64,000 nt of DNA from the NCBI RefSeq assembly GCF_964204865.1, contig NC_135250.1, positions 9,052,001 to 9,116,000 on the forward strand, in the 5' to 3' direction. Under the pieces are notes generated by a model. That model worked only from the letters and a program-made list of their open reading frames with translations. It had not been told where the DNA came from and did no database searches. A program made the translations under genes and the position numbers. Numbering within the stretch: position 1 is the stretch's first letter; each line of letters begins with the position of its first letter. Source of the stretch: Styela clava. Its lineage: Eukaryota. Below are positions 38,003 to 47,500 of this stretch, one piece after another.

Positions 38003-39128
38003 AACCAGAGCTGGTTTTAAATCACAATCAGTGTATTCCAACTTTGCTTCATCTTTCCTCACGAGGGCTCCTTGAAGTTTCATGGTATGGCCAGTGATAT
38101 GGAACATCAGCCCAAATGCATTTTTGCAAAATCGTGACTCGAAGCTATGATATGGGAGTTTCAAATTATATTGTAAACTTTTGATCATACATATTCAACT
38201 TGAAACTTCTTGAAAGTTAGATTTTGAAAATATGTATACACTTGAAGGGGTTGATTGCAGTGTTAAAAAATTATAAGTGTGAGAAAATAAATGGTTAGGA
38301 GCTGAAGACACTTAGAGTATGTTGTAGCTTTCCCATCCCTGCTTGAAACAATGCATTAAATACTGAGTGCGACAATGTTGGTTCCCCTTTATTAATTATC
38401 CCTGTTGTCAGTCTTGAGTCACACATTCCTGCAATCACTGTATTTCTTATGCCAATTATCAAGAAGTTCCAAATTTTTAAGTCTGACTCAGTAGTGGGCC
38501 TGATTCTTTTCTTTGTCAGTATAATTTTAATGAATGGTGAAGGGTTTTTGAATTTAATTTCTTTCTATGTATTTGTCACTGCTGTTTTACCATCTGAATA
38601 TAAAGTGCTTTATGATCAATCATGAATAGTGTGTCTGCTAAAATTCCTCTAAACTGAAATTAAATCTTCTTGTTTTTTTCTTTCTTTTCAATGTAGATTA
38701 TCATAGTTCCTTCCTCTGATACATGCAAATGCCAAATTTGAGTCAATATTAAATTTCTTTGGGAAAAATGTGTTGCTTTATCAAACTTGGTTACAGGTTT
38801 TGAGGTGGTGTCACAAACTTGTAAATATTAGTGTTGTAATTCATCCGTCTTCGAAGTTATTTAAAATAAAGTATGGCAAGTCATCACACCATTATTGACT
38901 GACAATTTTCAAATATTGTTTCAGGAGCAATAATATTTAATTTATGTTTAATACGGTTCTTACGACTAGCAGAGAATCTTTCGTTAACTGGTTGACATGA
39001 CCCAGAAAAAGGCCATCTGGTGGCAAGTTTTAGTTAAGATTCCCTTTGAAACAAATTTTGCCCTGATCTGTCATAGTGCGTCAGCCAACGCTTTGCTGTA
39101 GATTCGTACATCTTAGCCAGAGTCATAT

Positions 39129-39289
39129 CGTGGCGAGCACCAAATTCTCTAATTACAAAGCTGCTGTACAACTGAACACTTCTAAATAAGCCCCATAAAA
39201 TATAAATCGTTAATCGTGGCGAGCATCCAATTACAAAACTGCTGTACAACCGAACACTTCTAAATAAGCCCCATAAAATATAAATCGTT
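39129..39289. repeat. Tandem duplication, 2 x about 80 bp, between the DCAF1 and HDDC2 3' ends
   Basis: TCGTGGCGAGCA...GAACACTTCTAAATAAGCCCCATAAAATATAAATCGTTA occurs twice. Confidence 0.85.
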
Positions 39290-39585
39290 ACACATCTATC
39301 AGACCCCCACAACAGAGATGCGACCTATTTCTTAAAGGGGCAGCTGAGCTTTTAAAACGGTAGGTGCTGCTAATGCAATGACAACCATAAACCCGATGGT
39401 AAGCTTCCGCTAACTGATCTAAAGTACACCAACAAAAGATCAAAACGAATACTTTATTCATTAAAAAACTGTACTATCGAGAATACCATCTCGTTGCCAT
39501 AGGTGCTTTTGATTGGAGAACTGTTGAATTCACGGCCACCAGAAGTCATGCTATCCATCGAACAGTGCTGACCTCCCAAGAGCCA

Positions 39586-42329
39586 TCATTTCGTTCCCTC
39601 TGCAGACCTCTTCTCTTTTAAAGTTGCAACAAAATCTTTCACAGTTTGGGTTTTAAAATAACCTGAAAAAATATTTCATTTTTTTATTAGTTTGAATGCC
39701 AAAATCATTAACACAACAAACGCCACATATCAAACTAGATAATTCACCTTCCGTACTGTCAAAAAATTCTTGAAGCCAACCAGGCCTTTCAGAGTCATTT
39801 TCATATTCATAAGCCTGTAAAATCATATCCAACCTATCAAGATCTTTTACGAATATTGATTCAGGTGTCTTCTGCTCTTCAAATTCCTGTTTATATCAAA
39901 ACACAAATGAAGTTAGTTAGTAAGTAGAACATATTATATCATCAAGTGCGCTGATACCTGAACAATATTAATTTTAGTATTATTAAGAGTATTGTCTAAA
40001 CTTGAAATATCATGTGCAAGCCTCACTTGAAATAAACTTTGAATCTCTTCGGCATTATGTTGAGGCAACAAATCTCCAAGTTGTTTCATTGCATTCTGAA
40101 TAAATATAGTTACCGTTTATGAGGCCAAAAAATGACAATGTGGAATCCCTAAGATAGAAGGGGCCCAACTAATATATTGTGTTGTCAATATAGTAATACA
40201 GCAGACCATAGGTGCTTGGAGAGTTGGCACTAGCACAGTAGAATTGAAATCTGGAGTTTGCAGAAGTAGAAATTTCAAAATTTTAGACCTCTCATGAAAA
40301 CTAGGGATTTTAAAATCACAACGGACTCATGCCAAAGTAAAATTTGGTCCTCTCAGAGTTGAGGGCTGGGGTCAAAAGTTCCTTTTTCTGGAGTCAGGAG
40401 CCTGAAACAAAAGGTTTCTCGGTCACGAGTTTTGTTTATTAAATGGCTCAAGAGTTGGGAGCTGAAGTGGGCAATGCCATATTGATGCAGGATTGCTGGC
40501 AAAAACCAATAGGATGTTTCACACATGCTGGTATATTTGAATTATTACTCGACATACCGTTTCTTCCGTATATTTTTGTTCTTTCGAAATCCCATCGCAC
40601 GGGGTGTAATCTCCAACAATACATTCTGCCATGTCATGAACCAAGCAAAGTTTCATACAACTAGAAAAAAGAAATGTAAGATCATAAATTACTCACAATC
40701 AGGAATGGGTAGCTAGTTTGAAACTATAATGGCTCACGTGTTAGATTCAAAATGTGGCTCCAAAGCTTTATGTTTAACCTGATGTTTTTGGTATGACCAT
40801 TACCATGAAACACTATAATAGTTGTAAATTTTAAAATTACAAACAATAATAGGCCATATGTAGATTTATTGATCAGGGCAGAGTAGATGATTAAACACAT
40901 AGGAAACAAGGACCAATTTTAGACATGGCGAATAACACAAATTTACACCTTTTTTATAAAACTATTAATTATATAAGTTCGCACATGGAGTCAAAGATGA
41001 ACTAGCAATTTATAAGAGTTCCCATACAGCAGAATTTCAGTAATTCAATGGGTTCTACTGCTTGCTTGAAAAATAAGGTTGATAGCAAAAATCTATACCT
41101 ACTGGTCCTTCCGTAAATCTGGTTCACACATTGTCATTGCCATGATTGACATTCTGCAAGAAAATGTTGAGTGGCATTTCAAAATAGTGACATATCCCAA
41201 GATTTAACCAAAGGCATGTAATGAGAGACCCACTAATTTGGTTTGTTTATGTTTATGAGAGATGTTTATGAATATCTCGAATATTTAGGCCGGCTTCATT
41301 CGATGATTTAACCGCGACATAATTTAAAATCATCACCTCAAACTGGCAGATAATAATATTTGTTTTTAGATGTATAGCAGGGCTCTCGAGTTCGTGAAAA
41401 TTTAAACTCGCCACAGACTAAAAACCTTAAAAAATGTTGACTTTTTTGACTCCAGCACCGAAATCCAAGGTAATCACATTTTGATAACAAAAACATTGGT
41501 GTGTGCAAGCTTTCTTTTTATACACTGTTAAGAACACTTATTAAACTTGATGCTTTTTTAGTTTCCGAGGGAAATTTTGACTTTTATTATCGCCATTGAA
41601 GCTTTGAAATTTTGACTACAGGCGTTTGAAAATTCGACTCCGCTGGAAGCATGTCAAACTGTGCCCAATATAAAAAAAACAAAAAATTCCTGAGAAAATG
41701 GACTAATACCTAGTTTACCCCAATGTCGTCGTTCCTTTAAGTTGTGTCTAACTTACCTATACATGTGTCCACTTATTGTTTCAGGATCTTCCACTCCCTT
41801 TCTCACCCAGCCTGACCGCTTGATTTTCTGAATACCAAATTCGTTTGTGTGTGAGATATTTGAGAACGAATTGAAGTATCATAACATTTTATGTCAGACA
41901 ACTTGAAAGCTAAAGAGGAAAGTCAAACCAGATAATAAATTTCTATTCGCAAATTGATTTGAAGAGAGATAAACAGCATGGTTGGCAGACAACATTAATA
42001 TACATAACTTTGGACGTAAAATGATTAAAATCTTTTTCGTGAAGAATAATTTCAAATGGTATAAATACATTCTGGCAATCCAACTTAATAAAATTATCTT
42101 TTTAGGAAGTAAAATATTTATTATGATCCATTTTATTTCAAATATTCGAAACGACACGGAGAAAAGGAATTTGAAACAAATATAGTGTGTTTATAAGAAA
42201 AAATCGCAATTTGATTTTAAAATCTCTCACCTTTAATCTTCCCACTAATGAATAAAATGTCATCATATCTTTATACTTATTCATATTTCGGTTGATATGA
42301 CAGAAATTTCTAGTTACTAATTTATACAT
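39586..42329 (-). CDS. HDDC2: HD domain-containing protein 2 (5'-deoxynucleotidase family), about 202 aa
   Basis: Seven exons in phase: 42329-42231, 41827-41757, 41153-41103, 40660-40558, 40095-40027, 39886-39748, 39662-39586 (609 nt). Motifs LVGRLK-KIKRSGWV, ETISGHMYRM, LVHDMAECIVGD, FVKDLDRLDMILQAYEYE, LQEFFDST. Alternative start at 42284. Confidence 0.93.
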
Positions 42330-42569
42330 TCAAGTTCAAGCAAAATTATGACAAAAATCTATGTAAGAAAAAAATTAAACAAAAAAATAATCCATAAAAT
42401 TCATAATACAAGATTTCAGAAGCAAATTATCACAACAGATAGAAATTTACAAGAAATTTGATTTTTTTTCTGCAAATAATTTTTTAAAACAAAAACTCAA
42501 AGTCGTCAAAAACCTTTTAATTGCCGATAGCTTGCAAAGCTGTGATTTCTATTTTCCAGTTTTATCTAA

Positions 42570-43415
42570 TTATTGTGTTACAGCCGGTGCTGGCTGAGCC
42601 CCTTTGAAACGAGCGTTCATAAAGCCAGGCATAGGTAGAATTTGCCCTTCCTCGGCTTTGAAAAATGTATAAGATAATACAATATCATTAACTCTAGCTA
42701 ATTGCGGATCATTATCGAATTCAGGGTCGATATAAAAAAATACAGGCATGTCCACTTCTTCATGTGGATTTAACCATTGTTCTTCAAAGCAAAAACATTG
42801 AATTTTATTGAAATAGGGTCCAGCTTGAAAAGGCAGCACATTATAGGTTGCAACCCCTACAATAGGTGTATCAGTGGGATTTTTGGCTGTATAAAATGCC
42901 AGAGCAGTTTCTCCTGGAACAACTGTCACTCGATGCTGCGAAGGCTTAAAATTCCATTGCATTGCTGCATGTCTATCTGCGTTGAAAGTTACTGTGATCG
43001 GTCTTTCTCGAATCGGTTTCATTGTGCTCACATTTTCAGTTTTGTGGCCGATGTTAGGATCTCCGCCAATTCCTGTGGCCTGACAGAACATTCTGTATAG
43101 GGGAACACTTGCATATGAAACACCGATCATGAATATTATTCCAGAAGCAATGTATAATACAACATCAACATTTGAACCACGATTTGTATGATAATATTTA
43201 TTATTAATTGAAAATCTCAATCTTGAAACATGTAGTGTCCGTCTTTTACATTGCACAGCAAAATCTTGAGAAGTTTGTAATAATAACTTCTTTGTAGGAA
43301 AAAGAATTTTCAACATGGATTTTCCACTGCAAGTAGTCGATATTCCACTGCTGGTAGAAGCCAGCCTCAATTGACATTGCAATGTTCTGCATAAACTTGA
43401 AGCAAGTCTAAACAT
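42570..43415 (-). CDS. COX11: Cytochrome c oxidase copper chaperone COX11 (281 aa), single coding exon
   Basis: Presequence-like MFRLASSLCRTL, TM helix ending SYASVPLYRMFC, VVPGETALAFY, copper motif KIQCFCFEEQ, DMPVFFYIDPEF. First ATG after the acceptor at 43434-43433. Confidence 0.97.
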   Translation of the reverse strand: MFRLASSLCRTLQCQLRLASTSSGISTTCSGKSMLKILFPTKKLLLQTSQDFAVQCKRRTLHVSRLRFSINNKYYHTNRGSNVDVVLYIASGIIFMIGVSYASVPLYRMFCQATGIGGDPNIGHKTENVSTMKPIRERPITVTFNADRHAAMQWNFKPSQHRVTVVPGETALAFYTAKNPTDTPIVGVATYNVLPFQAGPYFNKIQCFCFEEQWLNPHEEVDMPVFFYIDPEFDNDPQLARVNDIVLSYTFFKAEEGQILPMPGFMNARFKGAQPAPAVTQ

Positions 43416-43434
43416 CTTGTTTTCAAATATTACT

Positions 43435-44526
43435 GTTTCAGAACAAAACATTACAGTTAAAAATCATATTATGGATAAAAAAAATAGGTTTTCTCGCACG
43501 ACTGCATTATGTGTACTTGCATTCAGGTATGTCTTCATGTCTAAAATGAAGAAAATAATGGAATGCTTTGCAAATAATTATATTCAATACAACAGATTCT
43601 TGATGTTTGGGAAATTTAAATATACTATCTATCTAGCATTCTATCCTATCAAATTTAATATACTTTATTCGAAAATTTCAATATAATACATGTGGCCATT
43701 GAAAAACAATTAATGATTTTTTCATTATTTCTGAATATTTAATTTAAAAATATATAAGGATTTGTGCAAATTTTGAGTCTAAATATTAGAATTTGAAATA
43801 ATATTAGTTTGCACTTTGCATTAAATACTAATTTACTCGTATACTAAGTAACACTGCTCACTCATATTGTTTCACTTTCAGACGCCCAACACGCTTTCAG
43901 ACTCAGAATACAATAAAAACGACAACAACGCGGTGACAGGTATGCGACCAACTACTGGAATAAAACCTGATTTTAGTCATAACATTACCAACAACAAGCG
44001 AAGGAACCAGTCCAGAGTATCCTCATACTAAGTAATAAAAACCTCATATCGGTATTTCACGCCGAATCTGTTCTTATCATAGTAGACTGACTGATAGAAA
44101 ACTTGATGTAATATTTACAATTACAAGTTCCAACGTTTCTAATATTTCGAATTACCAAATACTTGCCATGCAGATGCGCAACACAAGAAAAACGCCGCAA
44201 TTGTCTTTGTTTTATTCGTACGATATTTGTGTGAATGAGGGGAATTGGACACATTTGAGAGGTAGGAAAATCTTTCCACTTCCCGAGATAAATATGCAAA
44301 CATATCGCCCTAACGTTTCGGCATGTCATGCATGTAGGAGGTAGACGCTTTCTCTCAGATCCCAATGTTGATAATTGATTACGTCACAATGACCAAACAT
44401 GTGATTTATGTATTTGTTTATCCTGCGTGACTACCCGGAAGATAGAGAACCTATTCCAGGATTTTTTATTCAAGCTTTTGTGAAAATCATGTGTGAAAAT
44501 AACTCTGCCTAATTACAAAATTGAAA
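43435..44526. promoter_or_regulatory. Probable bidirectional promoter region between COX11 and KLHL10
   Basis: About 1.1 kb between divergent start codons, no recognisable TE, locally CpG-richer at about 43880-44420. Inferred from position only. Confidence 0.45.
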
Positions 44527-47500
44527 ATGTCATCAAAAGCTTCCGGTGATGCTCCACAATCAGGTAATCAATAGGAATTCACAGTAAGTTTTTTAAGTGC
44601 ATTGCAACCGACAAAGATTAATCGTTATATCTAAAATGTAGTTAAAAATCAAATTTTATATGAATGGCTTATAGTAATAGCTGTAGAAATTCGTTTGTTA
44701 GAGACATAGGGCAGCCTCGCGAGCATTCTTATATTTGAGTTTATTATTCACAAATAGTGAATGGTACACGCCGTACCTAATGGTACCTAACTTTCTGAGC
44801 TTATTAGTCTGCACTAACATTTTTTCGGGATTTAAGTTAGAGATAAAGAGTGAATATGTTCTGATTAATGAAAACTGGTAAGATGAGGTGAATCTACTTG
44901 TTTATCTTTTTCAAATACAGAAACTAAACGAATAACAGAAAAGAAGGATGATATTTACAATTGGAGAATGTCTTACGAGGCGTGGCAAACATTCAACGAC
45001 TTGAGAGAGAAGGGGCTTTTCTATGATGTCACTCTTGTCACAGACGACCAGCAAAAGTTTTCAGCGCACAGGATTGTTCTGTGCACGTGTGGTCATTACT
45101 TCAGGTACTGAAAGCTTTTACTTATTTATTTCGCAGCAATCTTTCCATTTTCTTACGTTATTAATATGATAAAAAAGGAAATATCCATTGCAGTATTCAT
45201 TTTCTTAAAGCGAAATGAAAAATCGTGCGTTTCATTTGATTGAAACACTAATACAGTCAAATGTCTTTCGGCATTTTTTACAGATCATTATTCAGCGGAC
45301 GCTGGAAAAGCAGTAGTCAGAAGGAAATACGGATTCCCGGAGTAAACGCTACTATGATGAAATGTGTTATTCAATTTGCTTATACAAGAAGTGTGAGAGC
45401 CAATCTCTAGTTTGTCTATATATATTTAATTTTTGCCTGGTATCTGCTCAAATTGTTCATATTTGTTGTTACAGATAAAGTTAAATTCTATAAGCGAAGC
45501 AAAGGAGTTGCTCATTGTTGGAAACCACTTCGGCGTTGACGAAATGATGAAAATATGCGCCCACTATCTCACGCAAAAAATGAAGCCCAAAAATTGTTTG
45601 GAATTTTGGGAATTCGCCAGGTGATAGATAGATAATGATTTATTTCCGATACAAGTACATAATACAGTAAGCATGAGCAAATAACAATAAGCATAAAAAT
45701 GTATACGGAAGGGGACGGGCAAGACTTCCAAGGTCAACAAGGTCGACCGACCCCTAAGGTAAGATTCTACCAAGACAGGACACTCTAAAGCAGGCATCAT
45801 AATTACAATAAAGAAATAGAAATTTTTGAGTTTTAAGCCCGGTTAAGAGGCTCCAGAAATCAATTCCCCGAAAGTATTGGAATAGAAATAAAAATTACAA
45901 GGAACAAAAACATCACATGATTACGCAGATCATGTTTTTGATAGTAATTAAAAATGCGAGAAAGAATAAGAAGGGCGTCGGGCTGATGAGAATGAGGCAA
46001 TTTCTATGAATAGGTGAAAAATTAAAAATACCATACTTCCCAAGCTATATAGTACATATAATTATTACTTCAGACTATATATAATAGTATCTTCAATAAT
46101 TTTCACAAAGACATATAAAGAATGCATATATAAGATTGTGAATTCCTATCCATTTGATTGTTGGTTACATATACTTTAGTAAAAATCAGCAATGCTTTTT
46201 CGTTAGAGTTGAATGAATAGTCAATAGATCTTCTAATATATATATATATATATTGAAATAAATGAAAAATAGGTATAACGAACTATCACTTTTTAAATCG
46301 ATGAACGTGGCCTGCATTTGTTATGTTCTATCTGTGACCCACAATACCCAGTCTTTGTGTTTTATTGATCTAGAATTTACTATTGCAAAGAGTTGGAGAT
46401 GAAAGCCTTTTTGTTTATTCTGAGTAATTTCCAATCACTCGCGAACCTCCAAGAATCTTGTAGTGGTAAGACGTTGATGGAACTGGATGCCGATAGTCTG
46501 CGGAAAATTCTTGAAAATGATGAACTCAATGTGAAAAACGAGAAGCTGCCTCTTCGTGTCGTTTTGAGGTTAGACCAGGGGTCACCAATTTTTTTTTTGA
46601 CTGCAGACCAGGTATGACTCAAACTGTGTTGAAACGGGCCGGACAAATATTTTTGTCAATGCAATACAATAAATTTCCAAAAGTAAGAAAATCCTTTCAA
46701 TTTATTCAACAATACAAATTCTACATTTCTGAAGTCTTGAATATTAAATTCTATATCGCAGAATATAGATCAAGAACAACATGAGGTTACCTGTTAAGAT
46801 AACAATTGCTGTCATGAATATTCGCATGTAAGCAGTACAAAAGTTAATGTGACTTGTACTATTAGCGTAAAATTCACGTTCGACGTTTATTTTAGCACGA
46901 GAAACGTACACAGCAACGGCACGCGCCACGAGTGTATCCTTCGCGGAAACGCTGCGTTCCGGTATAGAATTTTAGAAAAATAGTGATTGACTTACTTGAT
47001 TCATACTTAAATTTCTAAATCACGATCAAAACTAACGAATAGCATTCAAAATCGCGAAAACGAGATATCATTTGAAACCACAACTGAAAATCCGGAGCGA
47101 ATGCGAGAAGGTCTATTGTTAGGTCACGTTTTGCATCTTGCTGATTGGTCAATGTTACGAAATAAACAAGTAAGTCGATGCTCGGGAATACATCCCTTGG
47201 AAAAAATGCACCTTGTTTTCATGTTATTGCGGGCCAGATGAAAAGATGCCACGGGCCGCATCCGGCTCGCAAGCCGTAGTTTGGTGACCCCTGGATTAGA
47301 TAGTCAAAACTTCTCATGTCTACAACACAATTATATATATATTCATTTGTAAACGGCATCGTGTCATGTAAATAATATTTTATGTCCCTTTTTATTCAAA
47401 CAAGGGGTGTATATCTACATATATATCTTAATTTTGATTCCGTCGTCTTCAAGTACATTCTATAATCCACAAGATAAGCTGCTGGTTCTCACATATGGTC

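What the first reader, a model, noticed from the sequence alone, without database searches (positions are those of the whole stretch)
39586..43434. Candidate COX11-HDDC2 operon or shared transcription unit
Seen: both genes are on the minus strand, with only 240 bp between the COX11 stop (42570) and the HDDC2 ATG (42329). The spacer is very AT-rich with no promoter-like segment. It contains a possible ATTAAA poly(A) signal (42521-42516) and a long U-rich tract ending in an acceptor (...TTTTTTTCTTACATAG, 42360-42359) 30 nt before the HDDC2 ATG, with no evident exon or donor between. COX11 has its own acceptor 18 nt before its ATG. Known: tunicates resolve operons by spliced-leader trans-splicing. 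Inferred: either a dicistronic pre-mRNA, or the intronless COX11 is an alternative terminal exon inside the first intron of HDDC2 with a shared non-coding 5' exon. I know of no described COX11-HDDC2 co-transcription.
Basis: partly seen in the sequence, partly recalled or inferred. Interest (0 to 1): 0.78.

Follow-up and report, generated by a model that had tools for sequence, protein, structure and literature searches.

The report
Sea-squirt COX11-HDDC2 trans-spliced operon
Two unrelated housekeeping genes in a sea-squirt genome appear to be copied into one RNA that is then cut apart by adding a short "spliced leader", an arrangement already well known in sea squirts, so this is an ordinary new example and not a new mechanism.

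Summary
COX11 (one exon, stop at 42572-42570) and HDDC2 (seven exons, ATG at 42329) lie head to tail on the minus strand, 240 nt apart.

RNA-type contigs from three studies run unbroken from the COX11 coding sequence through the spacer into HDDC2 exon 1. In two runs they continue through all six HDDC2 introns, correctly spliced. HDDC2 intron bins have zero depth.

One contig joins a leader that is absent from the window exactly at the predicted AG (42360-42359). That leader is the published tunicate spliced leader (PMC3795323, "Chordata 1"). In this genome it is encoded, followed by a GT donor, in a tandem SL RNA gene array on another contig (at least 86 copies, many 1,634 bp apart, each behind a TATA box).

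This fits the Ciona-type operon, including a single-exon first gene and no AATAAA near the boundary. Three things were not shown: the COX11 poly(A) site, a leader on COX11, and the absence of a promoter in the spacer.

Other readers of this scan have noted many operon candidates elsewhere in this genome. Verdict: probable operon (0.68), a new member of a known kind.

The parts
43435..44161 (-). Candidate outron and promoter-proximal region upstream of COX11 (inferred). It faces a divergent BTB gene whose first exon starts near 44422 on the + strand.
   Evidence: Low-depth RNA contigs lie at 43501-43652, 43951-44078 and 44049-44161 (X1, depth 4.7-7.1) and at 43945-44047 (X3, depth 4.1), while five bins lying wholly inside HDDC2 introns read 0 (tables 2 and 8). 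Their strand is unknown.
43433..43434 (-). AG that could be the trans-splice acceptor of COX11 (not verified).
   Evidence: Sequence. RNA depth falls from 23.8 (bin 43240-43436) to 0 (bin 43437-43633) in X3, and contig 20 ends at 43418. No leader or joint was listed here.
42570..43415 (-). COX11 coding sequence: a single exon of 281 aa plus the stop codon.
   Evidence: Pfam PF04442 at 203.9 bits, E 1.6e-60. It is the only copy in the genome. The closest named relatives are tunicates.
42361..42569 (-). Spacer, most likely the COX11 3' UTR (209 nt, 23.4% G+C).
   Evidence: RNA contigs are colinear through it in X1 (record 4), X2 (record 17) and X3 (record 18), table 8.
42516..42521 (-). ATTAAA hexamer, a possible but unproven poly(A) signal.
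   Evidence: Sequence. In the X3 allele it reads ATTAAG (42515 T>C plus a 1-nt deletion at 42518, tables 3-4; this is my reconstruction).
42359..42390 (-). Pyrimidine-rich tract and the AG trans-splice acceptor of HDDC2.
   Evidence: In X1 a loose end of 23 letters is joined at 42356 (table 7). A 1-T deletion at 42353 in the RNA alleles (table 4) places the true junction at AG|A42358.
42231..42358 (-). HDDC2 exon 1: 29-nt 5' UTR, ATG at 42329, 33 codons.
   Evidence: Joint 41827/42231 in 3 of 3 RNA-type runs (table 5). Translation.
41757..41827 (-). HDDC2 exon 2.
   Evidence: Joints. HD_3 at 21.1 bits.
41103..41153 (-). HDDC2 exon 3.
   Evidence: Joints, table 5.
40558..40660 (-). HDDC2 exon 4, which carries the HD motif.
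   Evidence: Joints. HD_3 at 35.2 bits. Genome-wide HD_3 hit.
40027..40095 (-). HDDC2 exon 5.
   Evidence: Joints, table 5.
39748..39886 (-). HDDC2 exon 6.
   Evidence: Joints. HD_3 at 35.6 bits. Genome-wide HD_3 hit.
39464..39662 (-). HDDC2 exon 7, with stop TGA at 39588-39586 and a 3' UTR reaching at least 39464. AATAAA follows at 39458-39453.
   Evidence: X2 record 17 ends at 39464 (table 8). Sequence.

Best explanation
COX11 and HDDC2 form a two-gene, spliced-leader-resolved operon of the kind described in ascidians.

Inferred: transcription starts upstream of COX11, probably in the roughly 1-kb region it shares with a divergent BTB gene.

Shown at contig level: transcription runs through the intronless COX11, its AT-rich 209-nt trailer, and on into HDDC2.

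Shown once: the HDDC2 message is released and capped when the spliceosome joins the 24-nt spliced leader, donated by an SL RNA made from a tandem gene array on another contig, to the AG at 42360-42359.

Inferred from Ciona: the COX11 message ends at or close to that same boundary, so one precursor molecule may yield either message but not both. Without trans-splicing, HDDC2 could not be translated from the precursor, because the COX11 reading frame and its many AUGs lie ahead of it.
For: 1. One search, table 8. X2 record 17 (1,680 nt) is colinear from 43278 to 42231 (COX11 coding sequence, spacer, HDDC2 exon 1), then spliced through all six introns to 39464. X3 record 18 does the same from 42833. 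X1 record 4 is colinear from 43278 to 42310. That is 3 of 3 RNA-type runs, from three studies.
2. Five bins wholly inside HDDC2 introns have depth 0 in all three runs, while the two spacer bins read 78.7-108.2, 17.5-17.6 and 23.3-26.1 (table 2). The spacer signal is therefore not genomic DNA.
3. One search, table 7. A contig in X1 joins 23 letters that do not match the window at the predicted acceptor.
4. These letters are the published tunicate leader (PMC3795323 Table 1). There are 0 copies in the window.
5. There are 128 exact leader+GT copies in the genome against 0 for the reversed control. At least 86 lie on one strand of C8:4.23-4.58 Mb, many spaced 1,634 bp apart. All 16 array loci examined share a TATATAA about 32 nt upstream. 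The RNA folds with the leader paired to the start of its intron, z = -4.45.
6. COX11 is single-exon and comes first. There is no AATAAA or ATTAAA within 40 nt upstream of the acceptor. Both are traits reported for Ciona operons (PMC2760879; PMC1488885: 16 of 18).
7. Both genes are single-copy, so this locus must deliver both messages.
Against: - The leader junction was seen in one contig of one run (1 of 3 RNA-type runs).
- The tool labels these runs RNA only as a guess, although the splice joints support it.
- Contigs can chain overlapping transcripts, so a contig across two genes does not prove one molecule (the tool's own caveat).
- The COX11 poly(A) site was not seen. If ATTAAA at 42521-42516 is used, about 135 nt of real intercistronic DNA remain, unlike Ciona (median 1 bp, PMC7986045), and that could hold a promoter.
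- No leader was seen on COX11.
- In the only relative contigs I could reach (L043 and L044, about 70% identical single-exon COX11, organism unknown), no HDDC2 exon lies within 5.5 kb downstream. The pairing is therefore not shown to be conserved.
- In Botryllus fuhc, a similar 227-bp spacer with linked transcripts was judged by its authors to be more likely read-through. There, however, no leader was found (PMC3691228).
Confidence: 0.68

Rival explanations
1. These are two independent transcription units. HDDC2 has its own weak promoter inside the spacer or the 3' part of COX11, and its short outron is removed by ordinary monocistronic SL trans-splicing. The bridging contigs arise because COX11 3' UTR or read-through reads overlap that outron.
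For: In tunicates one leader serves both monocistronic and operonic genes (PMC7986045), so a leader on HDDC2 does not prove an operon. Contigs cannot show single molecules. ATTAAA lies 48 nt after the COX11 stop codon. The gene pair is not seen in L043 or L044. There is a Botryllus precedent for read-through.
Against: At most 209 nt, at 23% G+C, are available for a poly(A) site plus a promoter. Colinear RNA covers every 31-letter word of the spacer in 3 of 3 runs, with no break. The ATTAAA is altered in the X3 allele, yet the contig runs on. The single-exon first gene and the lack of AATAAA near the boundary fit the operon class.
Confidence: 0.24
2. COX11 is an alternative terminal exon inside the first intron of HDDC2, and both use a shared non-coding genomic 5' exon joined by cis-splicing.
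For: Both genes are preceded by an AG after a pyrimidine-rich tract. A leader-like copy lies on the same strand about 270 kb beyond the window's upstream end (L001).
Against: No joint to 42358 or 43432 from any upstream exon was listed in four runs (table 5). The leader has 0 matches in the window. The L001 copy is followed by AT, not a GT donor. The leader+GT form sits in an SL RNA gene array on another contig and matches the published tunicate leader.
Confidence: 0.03
3. The leader junction is an artefact: a chimeric contig, or a polymorphic insertion of one of the roughly 460 leader-bearing repeats at that site in the X1 animal.
For: The leader sequence is scattered through several repeat families. 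The junction rests on one contig.
Against: The foreign sequence ends exactly at the last base of the SL exon (...AAG), as defined by the GT donor in the array. It meets the gene exactly after the AG. In the repeat copies the leader runs on into repeat-specific sequence. A de Bruijn chimera would need about 30 shared letters, and there are none.
Confidence: 0.05

Closest known systems
Ciona intestinalis SL-resolved operons (Satou et al. 2006, PMC1488885; Satou et al. 2008, PMC2760879)
   Same: Same-strand neighbours. A single leader is used for all genes. The downstream gene is trans-spliced at its 5' end. Unresolved dicistronic RNA is detectable. The first gene is single-exon. No AATAAA lies near the boundary. 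The two genes are functionally unrelated housekeeping genes.
   Different: In Ciona the upstream poly(A) site abuts the acceptor, so there is no intercistronic DNA. Here that boundary was not seen and could lie up to about 135 nt upstream. The leader also differs: 24-25 nt here, against 16 nt in Ciona (the Ciona length is recalled, not from a call).
Oikopleura dioica operons (as summarised in PMC7986045 and PMC1488885)
   Same: One leader serves both monocistronic and operonic genes. The upstream gene does not have to be trans-spliced. Upstream cistrons lack AATAAA.
   Different: Oikopleura has intercistronic regions of 23-33 nt and was predicted with a 60-bp cut-off. The distance here is unknown, somewhere between 0 and about 135 nt.
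Botryllus schlosseri fuhc-sec / fuhc-tm pair (PMC3691228)
   Same: It is another sea squirt (I recall it as a styelid). It has a featureless spacer of about 230 bp, linked and correctly spliced transcripts across the spacer, and empty introns.
   Different: There, 5' RACE found no leader on the downstream gene, and the authors favoured read-through. Here the downstream gene does carry the leader.
Caenorhabditis elegans SL2-type operons (recalled; summarised in PMC1488885)
   Same: A polycistronic precursor is resolved by trans-splicing. If ATTAAA is used here, the spacing of about 100-135 nt would be similar.
   Different: Nematodes use a dedicated SL2. Tunicates have a single leader, and no second leader was seen here.

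Membership tests
Tunicate SL-resolved operon (Ciona type) | Neighbouring genes lie on the same strand, very close together. | tested here: met
   Both are on the minus strand, with 240 nt from stop to ATG and 209 nt from stop to acceptor.
Tunicate SL-resolved operon (Ciona type) | The downstream gene receives the spliced leader at an acceptor at its 5' end. | tested here: met
   One contig in X1 joins the leader at AG 42360-42359 (table 7). That is 1 of 3 RNA-type runs. The leader's identity rests.
Tunicate SL-resolved operon (Ciona type) | An unresolved dicistronic transcript exists. | tested here: inconclusive
   Colinear contigs span both genes in 3 of 3 RNA-type runs (table 8), but a contig is not a single molecule.
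Tunicate SL-resolved operon (Ciona type) | There is no intercistronic DNA: the upstream poly(A) site abuts the acceptor (the operational rule is under 100 bp between gene ends). | not testable with these tools
   Only contigs were served, the one read-laying run was used, and no poly(A) ends were listed.
Tunicate SL-resolved operon (Ciona type) | There is no independent transcription start between the cistrons. | not testable with these tools
   This needs CAGE, TSS-seq or raw 5' ends.
Tunicate SL-resolved operon (Ciona type) | Typical but not defining traits: a single-exon 5'-most gene, and no AATAAA within 40 nt of the boundary. | tested here: met
   COX11 is one ORF. The 40 nt before the AG hold no AATAAA or ATTAAA.
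SL RNA gene | The leader exon is followed directly by a GT donor, in multi-copy tandem genes with their own promoter. | tested here: met
   There are 128 exact leader+GT copies, at least 86 of them in one same-strand array, many spaced 1,634 bp apart. TATATAA lies about 32 nt upstream in 16 of 16 array loci.
SL RNA gene | The leader pairs with the start of the intron, followed by a single-stranded Sm-type site and a 3' hairpin. | tested here: inconclusive
   The fold shows these elements (dG -49.9 kcal/mol, z -4.45). AAUUCUCGG is only Sm-like by eye. No Rfam family matched.
COX11 / CtaG (PF04442) | A full-length match to the family profile. | tested here: met
   203.9 bits against a cut-off of 25, covering profile positions 1-148 of 148.
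HDDC2 / HD_3 (PF13023) | A profile match and the H..HD..D metal-binding residues. | tested here: met
   Exons searched singly score 35.6, 35.2 and 21.1 bits. GHMY, VHDMAE and DLDRLD are visible in the exon translations. The motif itself is recalled. The joined protein was not built or searched.

The most novel reading that the evidence does not exclude
COX11 may be polyadenylated after the ATTAAA at 42521-42516, leaving a genuine intercistronic region of about 135 nt. This would then be an ascidian operon of the spaced, nematode-like type and not the abutting Ciona type. One precursor could yield both messages, and the U-rich spacer would act as the element that recruits the single leader.
Probability: 0.2. 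Interest if true: 0.45.

Novelty: new member of a known kind. Interest (0 to 1): 0.3.

Why it matters
It adds one documented example of a chordate operon outside Ciona and Oikopleura, with the leader junction and precursor-like RNA both seen. It also locates this species' SL RNA gene array, which anyone annotating the genome needs to avoid fusing or truncating gene models.

The pairing of a copper chaperone for cytochrome oxidase with an HD-domain phosphohydrolase has no evident functional logic. That matches what is reported for Ciona operons.

The open point of wider interest is where the upstream message ends, because that decides whether one precursor can give both mRNAs.

Tried and rejected
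- **Transcript contigs encoding this COX11.** So I could not read the 5' end of COX11 in transcript contigs, nor the neighbours of the tunicate COX11 genes P0002-P0013.
- **Fused gene models as a sign of adjacency.** 0 of the 120 listed COX11 relatives also carry HD_3. Only 120 of 7,781 hits were listed.
- **Microsynteny.** In the metagenome scan, 0 of 80 loci had an HDDC2 exon at E < 0.05. For L043-L046 nothing scored better than E = 8.7. The organisms are unknown, so this is weak negative evidence.
- **COX11 start codon.** The alignment of nine relatives is too divergent at the N-terminus to decide.
- **Rfam.** 0 matches at gathering score in the window and two SL array units.
- **Tandem repeats.** None in 39000-44500.
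- **Other loose ends.** The 30-letter loose ends at 44900 and 41156 are not in the window and remain unexplained.
- **Literature.** 0 papers hold Styela plus "spliced leader". 0 hold COX11 plus HDDC2. The 15 papers listed have 0 occurrences of Styela.
- **Papers and what I saw of each.** PMC3795323, PMC3691228, PMC2760879, PMC7986045 and PMC1488885 were read as passages only, through find. All others were seen only as search listings. Supplements were closed. These include the species list behind "Chordata 1" and the Ciona operon lists, and they may already name this species or this gene pair.
- **Organism name.** "Styela clava" comes only from other agents' notes. I showed only that the genome is a tunicate.
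- **Spliced protein.** The joined HDDC2 protein was not built or searched. Exons were handled one by one.
Full report
**What is in the sequence.**
On the minus strand, a 281-codon intronless ORF runs from ATG 43415 to TAA 42572-42570. It matches Pfam CtaG_Cox11 over the whole profile at 203.9 bits. 240 nt further on, an ATG at 42329 opens a seven-exon gene. Its exons, searched one at a time, match the HD_3 domain at 35.6, 35.2 and 21.1 bits.

The spacer is 23.7% G+C, lower than the window (35.4%) and all six HDDC2 introns (25.9-39.2%).

Both genes are single-copy in the 377-Mb genome. COX11's closest named relatives are Clavelina, Phallusia and Ciona at 73-77% identity over 67-70% of the protein, so the genome is a tunicate. 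Other agents' notes call it Styela clava, which I did not test.

**RNA evidence (the single read-laying run).**
Thirteen runs hold the stretch. I laid three that the tool guesses to be RNA (X1, X2 and X3, from three studies) and one DNA-like run (X10). All are Logan contigs, so they show presence but not ends, strands or levels.

All six HDDC2 introns appear as GT..AG joints in 3 of 3 RNA-type runs and in 0 of 1 DNA-like run. This confirms the gene model and supports the guess that these runs are RNA. Five bins lying wholly inside HDDC2 introns have depth 0 in X1-X3, while X10 covers 30 of 30 bins.

The spacer, by contrast, is covered in every RNA-type run and forms part of long colinear contigs:
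- X2 record 17 (1,680 nt) runs 43278-42231 without a break, then through all spliced HDDC2 exons to 39464.
- X3 record 18 runs 42833-42231, then through the spliced exons.
- X1 record 4 runs 43278-42310.

So RNA that reads across the AG at 42360-42359 without being processed exists in all three runs.

**The leader.**
In X1, one contig fits the window only from 42356 downstream. Ahead of that it carries 23 letters that fit nowhere on the laid stretch (table 7). All three RNA alleles lack one T of the run at 42353 (table 4). That accounts for the 2-nt offset: the last loose letter is the genomic A at 42358, and the foreign part ends in ...AAG immediately after the AG.

The leader has these properties:
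- It is absent from the 64-kb window at up to 3 mismatches.
- It occurs 460 times in the genome at up to 1 mismatch, against 0 for the reversed control.
- It is followed by GT in 128 exact copies. At least 86 of these lie on one strand of contig C8 between 4.23 and 4.58 Mb, many exactly 1,634 bp apart.
- All 16 array units I read share a TATATAA about 32 nt upstream of the leader.
- 13 of those 16 units continue with an intron whose first bases can pair with the leader.
- One such unit, L038, folds into a leader-intron hairpin, then a single-stranded AAUUCUCGG, then a 3' hairpin (dG -49.9 kcal/mol, z = -4.45, 0 of 200 shuffles as good).

The same sequence is printed as the consensus chordate leader "Chordata 1" (25 nt, shared by 7 of 7 species) in Table 1 of PMC3795323. 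The species list is in a supplement I could not open.

**What this means.**
Satou et al. 2006 (PMC1488885, passages) rested the Ciona operon case on three things:
1. cDNAs of the unresolved dicistronic RNA;
2. the leader on the downstream gene;
3. complete absence of intercistronic DNA.

They also noted that 16 of 18 upstream cistrons lack AATAAA within 40 nt of their poly(A) site. Satou et al. 2008 (PMC2760879, passages) counted 1,310 operons holding about a fifth of the genes. They found single-exon genes strikingly enriched, especially as the 5'-most gene.

Here the first point is met at contig level and the second is met once. The locus also shows the single-exon first gene and the lack of AATAAA or ATTAAA in the 40 nt before the acceptor. 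The third point could not be tested, because contigs do not show poly(A) ends.

I infer that the 209-nt trailer is the COX11 3' UTR. I also infer that transcription begins in the roughly 990 nt between the COX11 AG and a divergent BTB gene (first exon about 44422-44562, spliced to 44919; BTB domain 41.4 bits). Low-depth RNA contigs at 43501-44161 (depth 4-7 in X1 and X3) look like a discarded outron, but their strand is unknown.

**Evidence against, and rivals.**
- A contig across two genes can be chained from overlapping transcripts.
- One leader serves both monocistronic and operonic genes in tunicates (PMC7986045), so a leader on HDDC2 does not by itself prove an operon.
- The leader junction was seen in 1 of 3 runs. 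No leader was listed at 43432, where the X3 contig stops at 43418.
- If ATTAAA is the COX11 signal, about 135 nt would separate the cistrons. That is far more than the Ciona median of 1 bp or the Oikopleura 31-33 bp, and it leaves room for a small promoter.
- Against that reading, the X3 allele appears to change the hexamer to ATTAAG (a T>C at 42515 plus a 1-nt deletion; my reconstruction, tables 3-4), yet its contig runs on.
- The Botryllus fuhc pair has a 227-bp featureless spacer and linked transcripts, and its authors favoured read-through. However, they found no leader (PMC3691228).
- Gene order is not shown to be conserved. The closest reachable contigs (L043 and L044, single-exon COX11 at 70-71% identity, organism unknown) have no HDDC2 exon within 5.5 kb downstream.

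No joint reaches either acceptor from an upstream exon (table 5). The nearest same-strand leader copy is about 270 kb beyond the window's upstream end and lacks a GT donor.

**Verdict.**
This is a probable two-gene SL-resolved operon (0.68). The main rival is an independent HDDC2 promoter with overlapping transcripts (0.24). It is a new member of a well-known kind.

Other readers of this scan have flagged many similar pairs elsewhere in this genome (115 notes hold the word "operon", unchecked by me). I found no paper naming COX11 together with HDDC2, and none linking Styela with the spliced leader. Supplements were closed, and 1.7 million PMC papers are not searchable.

Noticed in passing
G000:C8:4230890-4580000 (loci L027-L042): This is the species' SL RNA gene array. 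At least 86 leader+GT copies lie on one strand, many 1,634 bp apart, behind a shared TATATAA promoter. Two intron types follow the same promoter and exon: gtacaactaaattgtgg... in 13 of 16 loci, and gtttgttcttgcgca... in L029, L030 and L033.
   Followed up: partly
L001-L026 (dispersed over contigs C1-C19 of G000): The 22-nt leader occurs about 460 times, embedded in several unrelated repeat families. Some are same-strand pairs 5.0 kb apart with shared flanks on both sides, which looks LTR-like (L002/L003, L004/L005). It is usually preceded by AT or GAT. This suggests that retroelements or retro-copied trans-spliced RNAs captured the leader.
   Followed up: partly
window 44422-45108 (+): A divergent BTB-domain gene. 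Its first exon has an ATG at 44528 and is spliced from 44560 or 44583 to 44918 or 44921. It probably shares a bidirectional promoter region of about 1 kb with COX11.
   Followed up: partly
window 44900 and 41156: Contigs in both X1 and X3 leave the window sequence at these two places for more than 255 letters. Neither 30-letter consensus is anywhere in the 64-kb window. This is unexplained; it could be repeats shared with other loci, or distant exons.
   Followed up: partly
window 39506: X3 contig 18 leaves the reference sequence inside the HDDC2 3' UTR and continues for 735 nt of unrelated sequence, while X2 follows the reference to 39464. This could be a structural allele or a chimeric contig.
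   Followed up: no
window 39160-39300 (-): A direct duplication of about 70 nt (cgatttatattttatggggcttatttagaagtgttc...) lies just beyond the HDDC2 3' end. Tandem Repeats Finder did not report it.
   Followed up: no
window 42488-42531: A cluster of small indels (1-11 nt) and SNPs separates the RNA alleles from the reference in the middle of the spacer. The acceptor AG and the tract just before it show only one SNP (42374) and a 1-T length change (42353).
   Followed up: no
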